Counted from the first letter of the stretch, positions 4,969 through 62,290 are shown. The stretch is 64,000 nucleotides of DNA from Octopus sinensis (GCF_006345805.1 NC_043023.1:9300001-9364000); one strand, 5' to 3'. The notes: generated from the letters alone by a model not told the origin. Numbers and translations: made by a program.

Positions 4969-5040
4969 AGATCTATCCAATAATGCAATCGTGAAAATTG
5001 AAAATGGATCGTTTGCAAATCTTCCGAGATTATGGCGTTT
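4969..5040 (+). CDS. LRR exon E1: DLSNNAIVKIENGSFANLPRLWR(L)
   Basis: tctttcag|AGATCTATCC...TATGGCGTTT|gtaagt; 72 nt; phase 2-2. Confidence 0.92.
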
Positions 5041-5358
5041 GTAAGTTGAACAGTCTTGTTTATACTATATTCCTGAGTATATATTTCGTCAAATTTAATA
5101 TCTTTCCATCTTTCTTTCTTAACCTTCGTTTGCCCTTCTCTAACTCACATTATATATATCTCTCTCTATATATATGTATGTGAGTGTGTGAGTTGAGCGT
5201 GTTTGTGTGTGACGATGTGCGTTTACATTAGTCTATGCGTTCTACATCACTGTTTGGTATATTGTGAAAAGTGCGTATATAGTCATATGTATATTTATGC
5301 CTGAAACGTGTGGATAGATATATGGACCGTCAATGTTTCGTCTTGGGCAGGAGATACT

Positions 5359-6742
5359 AAACAATTCTGTGATGATATCACGTTGTAATTTTAACTCGAT
5401 AAATGAGCAAAAGCTACATTTATCAAAGGAAAAACGACAGAAACATCACGCAGAATGTCATAAAGGAATTAGAACCAGCGGAGAGATACATGTACTTATC
5501 GGTATTTGAAGTGGACATGATCAAATATTCAGTGATGAGGGAAAGGATCAGAATAGAATATTATATCAGGTTAAAAGCAATATTCAAGACAGAGCTGAAT
5601 GCAAGAAACAGAATCGAGGAGATCGGTACTTTTGCTATACCAGGCGTGACTTACAGTTTCAATATCATTAACTGGTCAATTATTGAAATATCTAATCTTG
5701 ACAGAAAAATACGAAAATTGTTGACCATGCGTAGAATGCACCACCCTAAACCAGATGTAGAACGATTTTACCTGCCAAGAAAAGAGGGTGGCCGTAATAT
5801 TTACAATTGGAATTAACAATTGAATTAACGATTGACCGAAACACCTACCAAAATAACTCTCATGACTGGATGTTAAAACTTATCTCAAAGCACGGAAACA
5901 AGAAGGTGTCATATAAAGTAACAAAAGATGCAAGGGAATATCTAAGTGAATTCCAAATACAACAAATCCCAGAGTTAGACGTACTAGAAACAAGCACAGA
6001 AAAAGCTAAGCGAATGAAAGTACATGCAAAGAATCTGACTTAGATATTCTTACAGATAAATGACAAAGAAAACAGCTCAATGGCAAATACCCAAAGAGAG
6101 CTAACGGTGCCGATGTGGATAAAGCCATTACCCATCAATGGTTAGTGTTTTCTAGCTTAAAATCAGAAACAGACGGATTTAATATAGCAGCTCAAGATCA
6201 AGGCCTACCTACAAGAAACTACCATATTAAAGAACGGCAGTCACCCAGCATGTCTTGTATGTAAACAACAAAATGAAACCATTGATCATGTTGTCTCCAT
6301 GTGCAGTCTTCTTGTGCATACAGAATATCTCAACAGGCATGATTGAGCAGCACATCATATTCACTGGTTAATTTGCAAAAACATAGACGTGCCACATGAT
6401 ACAATCTGTTGGGGACACGAACACACTCCAGTTCTTGAAGATGATCGCATTTTATCCTCTAGAACTTCGCCATTAAAAGTGACAGAAAGATAGATGCGAA
6501 TAGACCAGGCATTATATAGAAAAACTACAGGTAAAAACCATGCCTCGTCATTTAAAACTGTCCCAGTCGACAAAAATAGTATCTGTCAAAACCTACAAAA
6601 CTGAGCAAGTGTAAAGATCTTGAAATAGAAATTAGCAAAATGTGGAAGAAAAACAATGCCTGTTGTCATAGTTTCCCGAGGAATTATAGCAAAAGGCCTG
6701 AATCATAACTATCTCAGATACTAGGAAACATCAAAATGGCAG
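5359..6742 (+). mobile_element. Decayed 5'-truncated R4/Dong-like non-LTR retrotransposon (RT C-terminus, zinc-knuckle region, RLE endonuclease remnant)
   Basis: Frameshifted peptides KQFCDDITL..LDK.AKATFIKG, ELEPAERYMYL, ELNARNRIEEIGTFAIPGVTYSF, MHHPKPDVERFYLPRKEGGR and KDLEIEISKMW match R4-clade ORF motifs (from recall). Confidence 0.85.
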
Positions 6743-7813
6743 CAAAATGGCAGTTTGATCTTCCTGATATTATTAATCTTATTGTATGTTTCTACATATA
6801 TTGTCTTCCCTTCTATCTTCGCTCTCCCTTACATCCTCTCTAACAGACGTTCACATTTCCTCTGTGTGTGTGTGTGTGTGTGTGTGTGTGTGCGTGCGTG
6901 TGCGCGCGTGTATGAAAATGATTAAAGATATGAGTGTTTGTGGTTTACATTTGTTATGTGATTTATATAAATTAATGTGAACAACGTAACAATTAACGAT
7001 TAAAGACACAATGCCACAATATGGGGAAAAGCCATGTAGGACGACCAAGGGGATCCAGAGATTCAGATCTAACAATATTCGACAATTAGGCATCAGTAAT
7101 AAGAAGTAGAATACACATCCAGGTGAATTCCTCCTGTATGATAAGTAAATAGAAATATCCTATGGCAGAATTGGGAAAAATTCAGACATTTTGACAACAA
7201 ACGATAAATAGAGAGACAGTTGCGTTTATTATATTTCACATTATAAAGCCTACAATTGTTTATATTTTAATAACATTGATAAAATCTTCAGTATACAGAT
7301 GTAGTGGGAGCAACACTTAAGGTTGGTAACATAGATGCAAACACAAAGTTACAATGCTTATATACACATACATATATCTATACATGAATAAAAAATATGA
7401 CGAATCTGAATTGTAAACTGAATTTCGTTGCATTCAATAACATTTTTGTAATTGCAGACAGAGAGGCAGATTTACAGATGCAGACTCACACACACACACA
7501 CACACACACACACACACACACACACACACACACACACACACACGCACGCACACTCACAAACACGAACACTCTCACATACACAACCACAACACAATTTATA
7601 GTCATTCACATGCTCACATACATATACATCTAAATATACGTGTGTTACAAACATATATATATATATATATTATATATACACACGCAAATATACATACACA
7701 TGTTCACAGACATATAGACAAACATAAATATATATATAGACGTATATATGTACACACACACACACACACAAACATATATATATATATATATAAAACGATT
7801 TTACAACTGCACG

Positions 7814-8440
7814 TTCCCACGGCTTTATCGATCGCATTCTTACCTAGAATCGATTTTTGTAATTTTTTCAAGATTTATGCACGCCCTCATAGTGTCGGTA
7901 TCTTCATATCTATTTTGAGTGCAATCGGATGGAGGATGCCCAAGATCCTAGAAGACACACACACACACACATACAGATAGAACGGATTTTATATAATAGA
8001 CTAAAAAAATTTTTTTGGGGTTTGTTCATTCATAATAAATGGAAATAATAAGTTCGACTGTAGGGTAACTACTTCAAGGAGGGACACCGGATTACGTCCA
8101 AGACGGATGCTTCACCTCAGACTGTAAAGGGAGGTAACTAAATTGATTTTGGCAAATTTGTTTGTCACTCAACAGTAGTTGAAAAAGAAAATAGAAAATT
8201 GATGGACTGTGTATGAAATATGCATGCTTGGTGTTAAGGGAAGCAACTCCTATCAGCGCCATATTGTCGATTGTGCAACCAAAGAAAAGCGATTTCCCAC
8301 GGCTTTATCGATCGCATTCTCACCTGGAATCGATTCTTGTACTGTTTTCAAGACTTATACACGCCCTGATACCGTCGGTATCTACATATCAAAATTGAGT
8401 GCATGTGGATGGAGGATGTCGGAGATCTGAGAAGACACAC
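7814..8440 (+). repeat. Two ~147-bp direct repeats (7814-7960 and 8294-8440), probably fragments of one small dispersed element; copied into each S unit
   Basis: Both read ttcccacggctttatcgatcgcattct...ggatggaggatg..agatc..agaagacacac. Confidence 0.75.
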
Positions 8441-60065: not shown

Positions 60066-60299
60066 GTAAGTTGAATATGTTTTGCTGATACTCTTCACTT
60101 GATATATTTCTAAATATTTAATGCTTTCCTATGTTTTTACTTCTTGAACTTGCCCTTCTCTAACTCAGATTTTCTCCACTTATGAATTTGCAAATGTGAA
60201 AGTGTTTACGAATATGAAAATTTGTTGTTTACATCAGTGATTTGTATTATGTGTGTGTATGTGTGTGTGTGTGTTTGTGTGTGTATATATTTCTCAATG

Positions 60300-61880
60300 T
60301 GGTCATCTGGAGAGCATACGTTCTCAGACGTTTGAACTACCTCTCCCAACTATACCAACATAAATATTAAAATAACGGCGAAACTCGAAGCAATCCAACG
60401 AAGCTACACAAACGAAATTGCATCAAGGAAACATACTGGCTACTGGGAAAGACTGAAAGAGTTATAGCGTTTTGTGAAATGCATCCGCACTCTCTGAGAT
60501 ATGCAGTACAAATTATGTCGTAGCAGATAACAGATAAGTTTTGGCCGCTATTTTGACCCTGTTGTGTCCACTGCTCTGATTGGTTGGCATTGGCACAGTT
60601 TGTCTGTTGACTTATTTCGCGCCAATATGTGAACCAACCAATCAGAACCTTCCAATAAGATCATGTGGCTCTGTCTTTTGGGTTTTCTTCTTGAGCCTCT
60701 AGTATGTTATAAAATCCCAGTGATCCAGTGAATCTGGGTCTTTGGTCTCTGACCATTGACCACACCAGAGAAGCCAGTTTCATCAACGACCAGACCAGCT
60801 AGTTCCAGCGACCCAGCCATGTTCCCGCTCCAGACAGCGACGACGCCAACATACACCAGCAATGCAGGACGTCTCCACCACCGTCGCCTTCGTCTCAACG
60901 TCACCGTTATCTACCGTCGCCATCACCACCGTCGACTTCAACGGTACGTACACAGCAACTCGCTTGAGTTTAGCTCACACGCTGTTTGTGTAATCACACC
61001 AAGGTTAACAGCACAGCACGACCGGCAAGACCTTCTGTACCGATGTAACCTGGCAAATGGATCGACGCCCAACTTCTACACGCATACCAACTGCTCTCCT
61101 CTTTGCCTCAACTTCCTTGACACAGAGCGAACTGCTATTGTGTACCTGTACGAACTGGTATTTATTCTCCATCTTGTGTCTGGACATTCTTTCTTTGCTT
61201 TGTATTGTTGTTTCACTCTTTTAACTTACAACGGACACACAGACACATGTGCACACACTCAGACACTACACTCTGCTAGCACTCACACACGCTCTTATCA
61301 CTATGTACACATCCTGTAAATAAAGTCTTTCTTTCTCTCAAGCAGTAGAACGGTTGTGTTTTTCTCCTTATTCTTTACTGGCACTCATATTCTTTTATAC
61401 CACATATCTGGTTTTCTTATTTTCTTAGGGACGACCGAGCGTTGTTTCAAAGGAGACATTTCTGTCACCAACTCCTTTACGTACGGTCGTTCACTACAGA
61501 GTGAAAACTCTTCTCTGTAGAATGAATGTGAGAAAGATACGCAGTGATATAAACCTGGAAATTCCTGGAAGGCCGTGTACCAAACTTAGGCATTGAAAAT
61601 TACACAAACAGCAGAACAAGGCGCAGCTGCATAATGACAAAGCTCCCAGCATATCAATGAAAATACGGGAACAGATACTTCAATAGTTTTGATTTCAAGA
61701 GCCACAGCTCTACAATATCCTGCCAACATTCCCGAGAGAAGGTACGGCCTGAATGTAGGCGTCCTTTAAACAAAACTGGTCCATCTCCATTGAAGGGTTC
61801 TAGATGAGCCTATCTCACTGCAGGAAACACAGATGACGGCGGCGGTATCGAAGACCCTCTTTCACCAAATATCACATATC
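60300..61880 (+). mobile_element. Decayed CR1/L2-like LINE 3' fragment, interrupted by a ~1.07-kb insertion (about 60465-61527)
   Basis: LWRAYVLRRLNYLSQL, LEAIQRSYT, YWERLKEL ... RERYAVI*TWKFLEGRVPNLGIENYTNSRT resemble the CR1-group RT C-terminus (from recall). Confidence 0.65.
60705..61404 (+). mobile_element. Probable solo LTR (700 bp)
   Basis: Starts TGTTATAAAA and ends TTTTATACCACA (TG..CA, short inverted ends); AATAAA at 61319-61324; higher GC than surroundings; no matching TSD seen. Confidence 0.5.
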
Positions 61881-62218
61881 AGAAGATATGAAAATTGAAT
61901 TATTCCTTGTAATGACGCATCTTCGTTCCTTCGCCCATGAGCTGTAACTCTTCGCCTAGCGCAACAGATAATAAAGGCAACCCTCGTACTTACGGTTGAA
62001 GAGACAGACAAGGCCTAATTTCGTAGCCAGCACGTAAGTGACAGAGCCACTGTAGGTGATTAATTGATCGACGCTTATCATGATATCCGTCATCGAATTC
62101 TAAAACTTTGACTTCTTTTTCTTATCTTCCTAATTGTCATTCCTTAGACATTATAGTAAAAAATGTTGCAACTGGTCTCTTCTATATTATTTCTTATGAG
62201 TTCTCTTTTATCTTACAG

Positions 62219-62290
62219 GAATCTAGGGAATAACAAAATCTCGACTATTGAGCAAGGAACATTCAGGAATCTTTCCAACATAAAGTATTT
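62219..62290 (+). CDS. LRR exon E11: NLGNNKISTIEQGTFRNLSNIKY(L)
   Basis: ttttatcttacag|GAATCTAGGG...AAAGTATTT|gtaagt; 72 nt; phase 2-2. Confidence 0.92.

What the first reader, a model, noticed from the sequence alone, without database searches (positions are those of the whole stretch)
4969..62290. Hidden array of eleven one-repeat-per-exon LRR cassettes, each amplified with its own multi-kb genomic unit
Seen: 11 stop-free 72-nt exons with near-identical splice signals (CAG|, |GTAAGTTGAA), all phase 2-2, encoding 8 distinct 24-aa LRR peptides. Each lies in a tandem unit made otherwise of TE debris and microsatellites, and none appears in the ORF track. Known: 72-nt phase-2 LRR exons occur in LGR/RXFP/GRL101-type receptors and other secreted LRR proteins. 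Inference: the ectodomain is being lengthened and remodelled now by whole-unit duplication. E3=E4 and E8=E9 at nucleotide level, so it is very recent. Candidate variable recognition or immune receptor in a probable cephalopod.
Basis: partly seen in the sequence, partly recalled or inferred. Interest (0 to 1): 0.92.

Follow-up and report, generated by a model that had tools for sequence, protein, structure and literature searches.

The report
LRR exon array of octopus adhesion GPCR
The eleven 72-base exons are real and encode part of the leucine-rich-repeat outer domain of a 170-kb Octopus sinensis adhesion G-protein-coupled receptor gene, which has recently gained repeats by duplicating exon-plus-intron blocks; it is a striking member of an octopus receptor family that is already known.

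Summary
All 11 exons sit where stated, are 72 nt, phase 2-2, open in one frame, and splice to a 263-aa LRR run (Pfam LRR_8 E=1.5e-70).

The window is Octopus sinensis C27:9,300,001-9,364,000. The exons are numbers 6-16 of about 24 single-LRR exons in one + strand gene, C27:9,258,510-9,429,189. Its parts are signal peptide/LRRNT, LRR array, C-terminal cap, Ly6/uPAR-like domain, GAIN/GPS and a 7tm_2 domain. So it is an adhesion GPCR (RefSeq family name "ADGRG6-like"), not an LGR/RXFP/GRL101 receptor. It resembles the published octopus-specific adhesion-GPCR expansion.

Recent amplification is supported:
- The five 4.3-kb units differ by 0.28-0.79% substitutions, and the E3/E4 units by 1.2%. O. 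sinensis versus O. vulgaris collinear non-coding DNA differs by about 2.5-2.9%.
- The O. vulgaris counterpart has only 9 LRR exons.
- Divergence between units is about 5-6% in introns, zero in the 23 splice-signal bases, and 26-34% in the last 20 exon bases. Those bases encode the predicted concave-face residues (dN/dS about 2).

No RNA or read evidence could be examined. The O. sinensis cap exon carries three 1-nt deletions, which may be assembly errors. An immune role is unsupported.

The parts
4969..5040 (+). E1, 72-nt LRR exon (DLSNNAIVKIENGSFANLPRLWR), phase 2-2
   Evidence: The variable 3' segment is identical to the first LRR exon (V1) of the O. vulgaris counterpart.
9702..9773 (+). E2, LRR exon (FLSNNAIVKIENGSFANLPKLER)
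17037..17108 (+). E3, LRR exon (DLSRNAIVKIENGSFANLTSLTG)
   Evidence: Identical to E4. The surrounding units differ by 1.17% substitutions with no gaps.
24398..24469 (+). E4, LRR exon, nucleotide-identical to E3
31861..31932 (+). E5, LRR exon (ALSNNAIVKIENGSFANLLSLTF), in 4.3-kb unit 1
36161..36232 (+). E6, LRR exon (YLSNNAIVKIENGSFANLPSLEY), in 4.3-kb unit 2. Six of that unit's twelve private substitutions lie in the exon, at its first codon and in its last 20 nt, so this looks like a short gene-conversion patch.
   Evidence: A consensus query ending in E6's variable segment matches C27:9270420, 9012996 and 8948877 at 98% over 122 nt.
40460..40531 (+). E7, LRR exon (DLSNNAIVKIENGSFANLLSLTF), in 4.3-kb unit 3
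44766..44837 (+). E8, LRR exon, in 4.3-kb unit 4
49065..49136 (+). E9, LRR exon, nucleotide-identical to E8, in 4.3-kb unit 5
   Evidence: Units 4 and 5 differ by 0.28% substitutions.
59994..60065 (+). E10, LRR exon of a different type (NLQNNKISTMEQGTFRNLSGLEY)
   Evidence: No counterpart in the O. vulgaris locus.
62219..62290 (+). E11, LRR exon (NLGNNKISTIEQGTFRNLSNIKY), a tandem duplicate of E10
   Evidence: 59850-60462 versus 62075-62671, 82.7% identical.
30817..52316 (+). Five head-to-tail 4.3-kb units, each holding one exon, two copies of a 760-nt retroelement fragment and a GATA microsatellite
   Evidence: The units differ by 0.28-0.79% substitutions with 1-6 gap openings per pair.
1..33358 (+). 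Older tandem units of about 7.4 kb carrying E1-E5; the E1 to E2 interval is shorter, 4.7 kb
   Evidence: 92-96% identity; 5.5-8.3% substitutions, except E3/E4 at 1.17%.
5055..5815 (+). Retroelement (reverse-transcriptase tail) fragment starting just downstream of the exon; the same fragment follows every E-type exon
   Evidence: One search shows the repeats. One search finds more than 22,000 first-look candidates genome-wide, some inside ORFs of up to 1000 aa. It has no Pfam hit.

Best explanation
The 11 segments are coding exons 6-16 of about 24 one-repeat-per-exon LRR exons in a single + strand gene of about 170 kb, Octopus sinensis C27:9,258,510-9,429,189.

The gene encodes an adhesion GPCR with these parts, in order:
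- Signal peptide plus LRRNT.
- The LRR solenoid.
- A short Cys-containing C-terminal cap.
- A Ly6/uPAR-like three-finger domain.
- A GAIN domain with a GPS autoproteolysis site (HL|T) and a tethered-agonist-like TSFAILM sequence.
- A 7tm_2 bundle.

The LRR array would be the ligand-binding outer arm. By analogy with other adhesion GPCRs, engagement of it would be relayed through the GAIN domain and tethered agonist to the 7TM.

The array grows and turns over by unequal recombination between intronic repeats. This duplicates blocks made of one exon, a retroelement fragment and microsatellites. First came units of about 7.4 kb. Then, after the split from O. vulgaris, a 4.3-kb derivative was copied five times.

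Short gene-conversion patches move the variable 3' exon segment between copies. Selection keeps splice signals and the LRR scaffold intact while favouring different residues on the concave face.

Shown: the exon anatomy, the gene parts, the copy map and the divergence pattern. Inferred: that all exons are spliced into one mRNA, the signalling mechanism, and selection as the cause of the pattern.
For: Exons and LRR identity.

The array continues on the same strand. There are 41 intact 72-nt LRR exons in the 264 kb from the window start.

Downstream parts of the same gene, in window-extended coordinates:
- Cap exon at about 89.5 kb.
- LU-like exons at 92.36 and 92.83 kb.
- Tail exon at 97.3 kb.
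- GAIN exons, the GPS motif CSCNHLTSFAILM at 118.5 kb, and TM exons up to 129.2 kb.
- Pfam 7tm_2 hits at C27:9425583 and 9428710.

Between 9.258 and 9.429 Mb there is exactly one SP/LRRNT exon (9258510), one LU exon (9392826) and one 7TM. The gene has 14 E-type exons; 40 exist genome-wide, all in this C27 cluster or on three unplaced contigs.

Annotated relatives join LRR, cap, LU, GPS and 7tm_2 in one ORF:
- O. sinensis XP_029652320.2.
- O. vulgaris CAI9743655.1, which contains E-type repeats.
- O. vulgaris CAI9743535.1.

In the O. vulgaris counterpart locus the cap exon is intact and in phase with the LRR exons.

Evidence for selection:
- The 13 + 10 splice-signal bases are invariant in 17 units, although the intron tree length is about 0.6 substitutions per site.
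- Intron divergence is 5-6.7%, against 26-34% in exon nt 53-72.
- At the concave x positions dN is about 0.5 and dN/dS about 2; elsewhere dN/dS is 0.5-0.76.
- 8 of the 48 sites that vary among the five 4.3-kb units fall in the 72-nt exon, and 7 of those 8 are non-synonymous.

Evidence for recency:
- 0.28-0.79% between the 4.3-kb units, against about 2.5-2.9% between species.
- O. vulgaris has 9 LRR exons.
- Units cluster by species in a tree built from their flanks.
Against: - No transcript or read data could be examined.
- No annotated protein of 145-460 aa or 541-1720 aa contains the window's peptides.
- The RefSeq model for this gene (XP_036369832.1, 526 aa) covers only the GAIN-7TM part.
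- In this assembly the cap exon has three 1-nt deletions relative to O. vulgaris. Read literally, that ends the frame before the LU domain.
- O. vulgaris and O. bimaculoides annotations often split the LRR(-LU) part from the GPCR part.
- dS is also raised in the variable segment (0.26, against about 0.06 in introns). Part of the pattern is therefore old diversity that has been preserved or shuffled, not new positive selection.
- E5-E9 are so young that their being intact says little on its own.
Confidence: 0.72

Rival explanations
1. The LRR(-LU) part is its own secreted product. It would arise from an independent transcript or an early polyadenylation isoform, and would not be joined to the 7TM. 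On this view the window encodes a soluble decorin/IGFALS-like LRR protein.
For: - The O. vulgaris annotation has a 190-aa LRR-only model (CAI9743665.1). It ends in an alternative phase-compatible exon that is 100% conserved in this genome at extended coordinate 87909-87977.
- O. bimaculoides RefSeq has three 'decorin-like' isoforms that stop after the LU domain by intron read-through.
Against: - Several models in O. sinensis and O. vulgaris join LRR, cap, LU and 7TM in one ORF.
- The phases are compatible throughout.
- The O. vulgaris downstream model starts artificially at an internal ATG inside the cap exon.
- The isoform ends in O. bimaculoides are intronic read-through, which is typical of incomplete models.
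Confidence: 0.13
2. The amplified exons are passengers. The gene is decaying in O. sinensis, or the extra copies are skipped pseudo-exons inside a giant intron, and they look intact only because they are young.
For: - The cap exon is frameshifted in this assembly.
- The neighbouring paralogue (gene 2) has a frameshifted cap and a TGA in its 7TM exon.
- In gene 3 two duplicated LRR exons have GT>AT donors and one has lost a base.
- E5-E9 units are less than 0.8% diverged.
- No annotated protein contains these peptides.
Against: - All 11 window exons, including units that are 5-8% diverged, are 72 nt long and open with LRR scaffold residues intact, and the 9 E-type ones share invariant splice signals.
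- Changes are concentrated in concave-face codons and are mostly non-synonymous.
- All downstream LU, GAIN and TM exons of this gene are open.
- The three deletions sit in short homopolymers. This assembly shows four times more 1-nt deletions than insertions relative to O. vulgaris, which suggests sequencing error.
Confidence: 0.1
3. Assembly over-expansion: the true array has fewer copies, and the near-identical units were created by mis-assembly of long noisy reads.
For: - The assembly has 13,516 contigs and an apparent indel bias.
- Three unplaced contigs carry the same exon type.
- The O. vulgaris counterpart has far fewer exons.
Against: - The units differ mainly by substitutions (12-34 per pair) and by few indels, and some variants are shared between units.
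- An independent O. vulgaris assembly also shows an 8-unit array of the same exon type.
- Paralogues carry 3-7 such exons each.
Confidence: 0.1
4. One reading: an LGR/RXFP/GRL101-type (rhodopsin-class) receptor, or a dedicated immune receptor of the VLR/TLR kind.
For: 72-nt phase-2 LRR exons do occur in LGR-type genes (established knowledge). Hypervariable concave positions recall immune LRR receptors.
Against: - The downstream 7TM is 7tm_2 with a GPS motif.
- No TIR or LDLa exon turned up in what was examined; they were not searched for specifically.
- The cassettes have canonical in-phase splice sites, so they are exons and not VLR-type donor cassettes.
- The published octopus adhesion-GPCR expansion is expressed in nerve cord, sucker and skin (PMC6408891).
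Confidence: 0.03

Closest known systems
Octopus-specific adhesion GPCR expansion ('group 3' of Ritschard et al. 2019, PMC6408891), annotated by RefSeq as 'adhesion G-protein coupled receptor G6-like'
   Same: GPS plus adhesion 7TM, LRRs in some members, tandem clusters, and reported signs of positive selection. The best database relatives are O. sinensis, O. vulgaris and O. bimaculoides proteins with that name, at 44-81% identity. One relative carries a Death domain, as that paper reports for one member.
   Different: The paper does not describe one-LRR-per-exon arrays, intragenic exon amplification or the LU domain. Membership of 'group 3' is inferred here from annotation and domain content, not from a phylogeny.
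LU-domain GPCRs of molluscs, arthropods and starfish (Acta Naturae 2026, PMC13719153; Mar Drugs 2024, PMC11595613)
   Same: An N-terminal three-finger (Ly6/uPAR) domain in front of a 7TM. The paper's figure legend lists GPS and LRR among the domains of the novel architectures it shows. Here a profile of the Cys-rich domain hits LYPD1 at E=3.4e-4, ACVR1 at 0.0095 and Lynx1 at 0.069. The top fold matches are three-finger proteins.
   Different: That survey does not mention octopus by name, and it was not checked whether this gene is among its examples. The fold match here is weak (TM about 0.46-0.5, E=0.13).
Vertebrate ADGRA2/ADGRA3 (GPR124/GPR125)
   Same: Adhesion GPCRs with N-terminal LRRs followed by other ectodomain modules, then GAIN/GPS and 7TM (established knowledge).
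   Different: Those have about 4 LRRs plus Ig and HRM domains. This gene has about 24 LRRs and an LU-like domain. By sequence the 7TM is nearest to ADGRG-type receptors. Orthology was not tested.
LGR / RXFP / GRL101 receptors and SLIT genes
   Same: One LRR per exon of about 72 nt, with all introns in the same phase, so that exon duplication or skipping keeps the frame (established knowledge).
   Different: LGR-type receptors have a 7tm_1 domain with or without LDLa modules. SLITs have four capped LRR blocks plus EGF and LamG domains. Neither matches what lies downstream here.
Lamprey VLR loci; Dscam and protocadherin exon arrays
   Same: Many similar recognition cassettes in tandem, with diversity focused on binding residues.
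   Different: VLR cassettes lack splice sites and are copied in somatically. Dscam clusters have short introns and selector RNA elements. Here the introns are 2-11 kb and nothing indicates somatic or mutually exclusive use.

Membership tests
Typical 24-residue extracellular LRR | Consensus LxxLxLxxNxIxxIxxxxFxxLxxL repeated in register | tested here: met
   All 11 exons fit the consensus. Pfam LRR_8 E=1.5e-70 on the spliced product.
Adhesion GPCR | 7tm_2 (class B) transmembrane domain on the same strand downstream | tested here: met
   PF00002 hits at C27:9425583-9425732 and 9428710-9428997. TM1-TM7 exons are open and 84-92% identical to O. vulgaris CAI9743664.1.
Adhesion GPCR | GAIN domain ending in a GPS motif with an HL|T cleavage site and a tethered-agonist sequence | tested here: met
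   CSCNHLTSFAILM at extended coordinate 118548-118688. Pfam GPS E=5.5e-15 in the paralogue XP_029652320.2. Cleavage itself is not testable here.
Adhesion GPCR | The adhesion-type ectodomain (here the LRRs) lies in the same transcript as the 7TM | tested here: inconclusive
   One SP, one LU and one 7TM lie in the interval and the phases are compatible. Paralogue and orthologue-of-paralogue models join them. There is no RNA evidence for this gene, and its cap exon is frameshifted in this assembly.
   The downstream 7TM is 7tm_2 with a GPS motif. All close relatives carry PF00002 and PF01825, not PF00001. LDLa was not searched for specifically.
Octopus 'group 3' adhesion GPCR expansion (PMC6408891) | Falls inside that octopus-specific clade in a class B phylogeny | not tested
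   Indirect only. The relatives have the same annotation names, the same LRR and Death domain content, and the same clustered arrangement.
Ly6/uPAR (three-finger) domain | 8-10 Cys pattern ending in CCxxxxCN, with a three-finger beta fold | tested here: inconclusive
   Ten invariant Cys, including CC..(L)CN. PDB profile hits: LYPD1 3.4e-4, ACVR1 0.0095, Lynx1 0.069. AF2 model pLDDT 74, with top Foldseek hits all three-finger proteins but E at or above 0.13. No Pfam hit.
VLR-type somatic assembly cassettes | Cassettes without splice signals flanking an incomplete germline gene | tested here: not met
   Every cassette has a canonical AG acceptor and GTAAGT donor in a constant phase.

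The most novel reading that the evidence does not exclude
The array of frame-neutral (72-nt, phase 2-2) LRR exons is used variably. Different cells could include different subsets by splicing, or individuals could differ in copy number. One adhesion-GPCR gene would then yield a repertoire of ectodomains with different concave surfaces. 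That would be a recognition-diversity system in the octopus peripheral nervous and sensory tissues, alongside the expanded protocadherins. The O. vulgaris model that skips three of the eight E-type exons and the 24-versus-9 exon difference between sister species are compatible with this, but they do not show it.
Probability: 0.1. Interest if true: 0.8.

Novelty: new member of a known kind. Interest (0 to 1): 0.45.

Why it matters
Adhesion GPCRs with LRR arms have been reported as an octopus-specific expansion, expressed in arm nerve cord, suckers and skin. What they bind is unknown.

This locus shows how such an ectodomain is being built. Whole exon-plus-intron blocks are duplicated and short patches are exchanged. 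Splice signals and the repeat scaffold are conserved, while the predicted binding face diverges five times faster than the introns. If the assemblies are right, two species only about 2.5-3% apart differ more than twofold in repeat number in the same gene.

That makes the gene a concrete, testable case of ongoing domain-repeat evolution. It is also a candidate for ligand-specificity differences between closely related octopuses.

There is a practical point too. Current annotations split or miss the LRR part of these genes, so published domain counts (LRRs in 5 of 22 members) probably understate them.

Tried and rejected
- Long-protein search. A search with all 41 concatenated LRR exons found only generic matches of about 30% identity (chaoptin, artichoke). 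So there is no long annotated model of this array.
- More flanking sequence. The upstream half of the gene was therefore mapped only by coordinates from the genome search.
- Early reading of gene ends. At first I read the cap exons of genes 2 and 3 as terminal exons with stop codons. Comparison with O. bimaculoides XP_052833937.1 showed a GTTAGT donor and further exons.
- One-nucleotide-off matches. The GTAAGTTGAC sites 148 nt after several exons lie in a GT-rich microsatellite and mean nothing.
- Retroelement and other ORFs. Pfam gave no hit on the retroelement-tail ORFs or on the 188-aa ORF at 60753-61316.
- LU domain model. The single-sequence AlphaFold model was unusable, at pLDDT 51.
- O. 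bimaculoides locus. The exact-sequence look-up found nothing on record.
- RNA genes. There are no tRNA or Rfam matches in the window.
- Rejected readings. An LGR/GRL101 identity and VLR-like cassettes were considered and rejected (see the membership tests).

Full report
**1. Observation**

The decamer GTAAGTTGAA occurs exactly 11 times on the + strand. Each occurrence is preceded by a 72-nt segment that follows a pyrimidine tract and CAG. Only one frame is open in all eleven: 1 base + 23 codons + 2 bases. The split codon is TT|A or TT|G (Leu), so every flanking intron is phase 2.

The exons give 8 distinct peptides. E3=E4 and E8=E9 are nucleotide-identical. Spliced together they make 263 aa of canonical 24-residue LRRs (Pfam LRR_8 E=1.5e-70).

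Self-alignment shows three sets of tandem units:
- Units of about 7.4 kb, 92-96% identical.
- Five 4.3-kb units at 30817-52316, 98.5-98.8% identical.
- A 2.2-kb E10/E11 duplication, 83% identical.

The remainder of each unit is microsatellite plus a fragment of a very abundant retroelement, with more than 22,000 first-look candidates genome-wide. The description in the finding is correct.

**2. Where it is**

The window is G000:C27:9,300,001-9,364,000 of a 2.72-Gb, 13,516-contig genome. RefSeq Octopus sinensis proteins sit on a contig of exactly C27's length, 21,331,139 bp. The organism is therefore O. sinensis.

I fetched the 200 kb downstream.

**3. The gene**

The 72-nt LRR exon series continues on the + strand, with 41 intact exons in 264 kb.

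Two cephalopod proteins gave the key:
- O. vulgaris CAI9743665.1 (190 aa) is a signal peptide plus LRRNT followed by a repeat identical to E1.
- O. bimaculoides 'decorin-like' XP_052833937.1 (456 aa) is SP-LRRNT, 8 LRRs, a Cys-containing cap, a Cys-rich domain and a tail.

Using them and O. vulgaris CAI9743664.1, I located the rest of the gene in window-extended coordinates:
- After the last LRR exon (83650) comes the cap exon, at about 89523.
- Cys-rich domain exons at 92356 and 92829.
- A tail exon at 97284.
- GAIN exons between 99.8 and 118 kb.
- The GPS motif CSCNHL|TSFAILM at 118.5 kb.
- TM exons at 120.2, 123.0, 125.6 and 127.9 kb.
- A last exon at 128.6-129.2 kb.

Pfam 7tm_2 hits fall at C27:9425583 and 9428710. 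Upstream, the only SP/LRRNT exon is at C27:9258510. Five more E-type exons lie at 9263024, 9270420, 9277346, 9284804 and 9298671.

So the gene spans about 170.7 kb and has about 24 LRR exons. These are 14 of the 'NNAIVKIENG' E-type, then E10 and E11, then 8 more. The window holds numbers 6-16.

It is an adhesion GPCR. It is not an LGR/RXFP/GRL101 receptor.

**4. Family context**

The same exon types map to a cluster of paralogues on C27 between 8.35 and 9.60 Mb, on both strands.
- Four of them each have one SP exon, 3-7 E-type exons, one LU exon and one 7TM.
- Gene 2, just downstream, looks degenerate, with a frameshifted cap and a TGA in its 7TM exon.
- Gene 3 carries a 12.7-kb block of 7 LRR exons in three copies. 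Two copies of one exon have GT>AT donors and one exon has lost a base.

The closest database proteins are octopus 'adhesion G-protein coupled receptor G6-like' models. Several contain LRR, GPS and 7tm_2 in one ORF. One of these, O. vulgaris CAI9743655.1, has E-type repeats spliced through the cap and LU to the 7TM.

Ritschard et al. 2019 (PMC6408891) described an octopus-specific adhesion-GPCR expansion:
- LRRs in 5 of 22 members and a Death domain in one.
- Tandem clusters.
- Branch-level positive selection.
- Expression in axial nerve cord, suckers and skin of O. bimaculoides.

The gene here fits that description. I did not build the tree that would prove membership.

**5. The Cys-rich domain**

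A 23-sequence profile of this domain matches human LYPD1 (E=3.4e-4), the ACVR1 ectodomain (0.0095) and Lynx1 (0.069). An AlphaFold model (pLDDT 74) has three-finger proteins as its top fold matches, though weakly. It has no Pfam hit.

GPCRs with N-terminal LU domains in molluscs were reported in 2026. That paper's figure legend lists GPS and LRR among the domains of the architectures it shows (PMC13719153).

**6. Is the array constrained?**

I aligned the nine E-type units of the window with the eight of the O. vulgaris locus. Pairwise divergence by region:

| Region | Divergence |
|---|---|
| Introns | 5-6.7% |
| 50 nt next to the exon | 1.6-5% |
| Exon nt 5-52 | 3-9% |
| Exon nt 1-4 | 17-20% |
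| Exon nt 53-72 | 26-34% |

The last 13 intron bases before the exon and the first 10 after it are invariant in all 17 units. The flank tree has a total length of about 0.6 substitutions per site, which would predict about 14 changes there.

In LRR register the hot codons are residues 22, 23, 1, 3 and 4 of each repeat. These are the x positions of the xxLxLxx beta-strand, on the concave face. There dN is 0.51-0.56 and dN/dS is about 2. Elsewhere dN/dS is 0.5-0.76.

dS is also raised in the hot segment, at 0.26. Much of the diversity is therefore old and has been preserved or shuffled.

A short conversion patch is visible directly. In the second 4.3-kb unit, 6 of its 12 private substitutions lie in the first codon and the last 20 nt of E6. 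A consensus query ending in E6's variable segment matches other exons of the cluster at 98%. Overall, 8 of the 48 sites that vary among the five young units fall in the 72-nt exon, where about 0.8 would be expected, and 7 of those 8 are non-synonymous.

**7. How recent?**

- The five 4.3-kb units differ by 0.28-0.79% substitutions, with few indels and some shared variants.
- The E3 and E4 units differ by 1.17%.
- Collinear non-coding DNA of the 3' half of the gene differs by about 2.5-2.9% between O. sinensis and the O. vulgaris locus OX597842.1:21.60-21.72 Mb.
- That O. vulgaris locus has identical LU exons at the protein level. From SP to cap it has only 9 LRR exons in 99 kb, against about 24 in 131 kb here.
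- Unit flanks cluster by species, not as one-to-one orthologues.

The 4.3-kb amplification therefore post-dates the species split, and both arrays have been turning over.

**8. Caveats**

(a) No RNA or read data were available.

(b) No annotated protein of 145-460 aa or 541-1720 aa contains the window peptides. RefSeq models only the GAIN-7TM part of this gene, as XP_036369832.1.

(c) The cap exon in this assembly has three 1-nt deletions relative to O. vulgaris, where it is intact.
- All three sit in short homopolymers.
- The assembly shows 103 single-base deletions against 26 insertions in this comparison, so sequencing error is plausible.
- However, none of the window's 11 LRR exons has such an indel, so a real lesion cannot be excluded.

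(d) Annotations in two other species end some LRR(-LU) models before the GPCR part. A secreted isoform is therefore possible.

(e) The copy number rests on one assembly.

**9. Verdict**

The finding is real and well described. Its interpretation is right about recent ectodomain growth and about variable recognition surfaces. It is wrong about the receptor class and unsupported about immunity.

The gene looks like a member of an octopus adhesion-GPCR family that has already been reported. What is new is the detailed picture of exon-block amplification, patchy conversion and face-specific divergence, together with the large difference between sister species.

Noticed in passing
Downstream of the window: C27:9,389,523-9,389,700 (extended coordinate 89523-89700): The cap exon of the same gene has three single-base deletions in short homopolymers relative to the intact O. 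vulgaris exon. They break the frame. This is either assembly error or a real inactivating lesion.
   Followed up: partly
C27:9,459,453-9,487,683 (extended coordinate 159-188 kb): The next paralogue ('gene 2') looks like a pseudogene. Only two LRR exons were seen, the cap exon has a 1-nt deletion and an early stop, the 7tm_2 exon contains a TGA, and no SP/LRRNT exon was found.
   Followed up: partly
C27:9,514,896-9,560,330 (extended coordinate 214.9-260.3 kb): 'Gene 3' has a 12.7-kb block of seven LRR exons in three tandem copies. Its O. bimaculoides counterpart (XP_052833937.1) has 8 LRRs in all. Two copies of one exon carry a GT>AT donor and one exon has lost a base, so exon birth and death are both visible.
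   Followed up: partly
Extended coordinate 92356-93010, and paralogues genome-wide: A Ly6/uPAR-like three-finger domain lies between the LRR cap and the GAIN domain. More than 70 such exons were seen in the genome, many of them on C29. Some annotated octopus proteins carry 2-3 tandem copies (for example P0189, P0190 and P0168).
   Followed up: partly
Extended coordinate 87909-87977; O. vulgaris locus L041 at about 107.5 kb: An alternative phase-2 terminal exon encodes a hydrophobic tail (RMPQKLKVQIVAFIVSTAVHAFL*). The O. vulgaris LRR-only model uses it, and it is 100% conserved here. It could give a short LRR-only isoform, or it could be an annotation artefact.
   Followed up: no
O. vulgaris OX597842.1 (locus L041), gene models CAI9743665.1 and CAI9743664.1: The O. 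vulgaris annotation splits what looks like one gene. The second model starts at an internal ATG inside the cap exon.
   Followed up: yes
Unplaced contigs C12407, C11413 and C11289: These contigs carry E-type LRR exons and LU exons that are 87-96% identical to those of the C27 cluster. They could be alternative haplotypes or uncollapsed duplicates.
   Followed up: no
window:60753-61316 (+), and G+C-richer stretches at 1-2000, 12-14 kb, 26-28 kb, 54-56 kb and 60-62 kb: A 188-aa Ser/Thr/Pro/His-rich open frame lies between E10 and E11, and there are recurring stretches of 40-42% G+C in each large unit. The ORF has no Pfam hit, and the origin of these stretches is unknown; they are probably repeat-derived.
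   Followed up: partly
window:5055-5815 and the equivalent position after every E-type exon, also in paralogues (for example C27:9263457, 9013284, 8933122): The same retroelement fragment follows every E-type exon in all five paralogous genes. Its insertion therefore pre-dates the amplification of the unit. The 4.3-kb units hold a second copy.
   Followed up: partly
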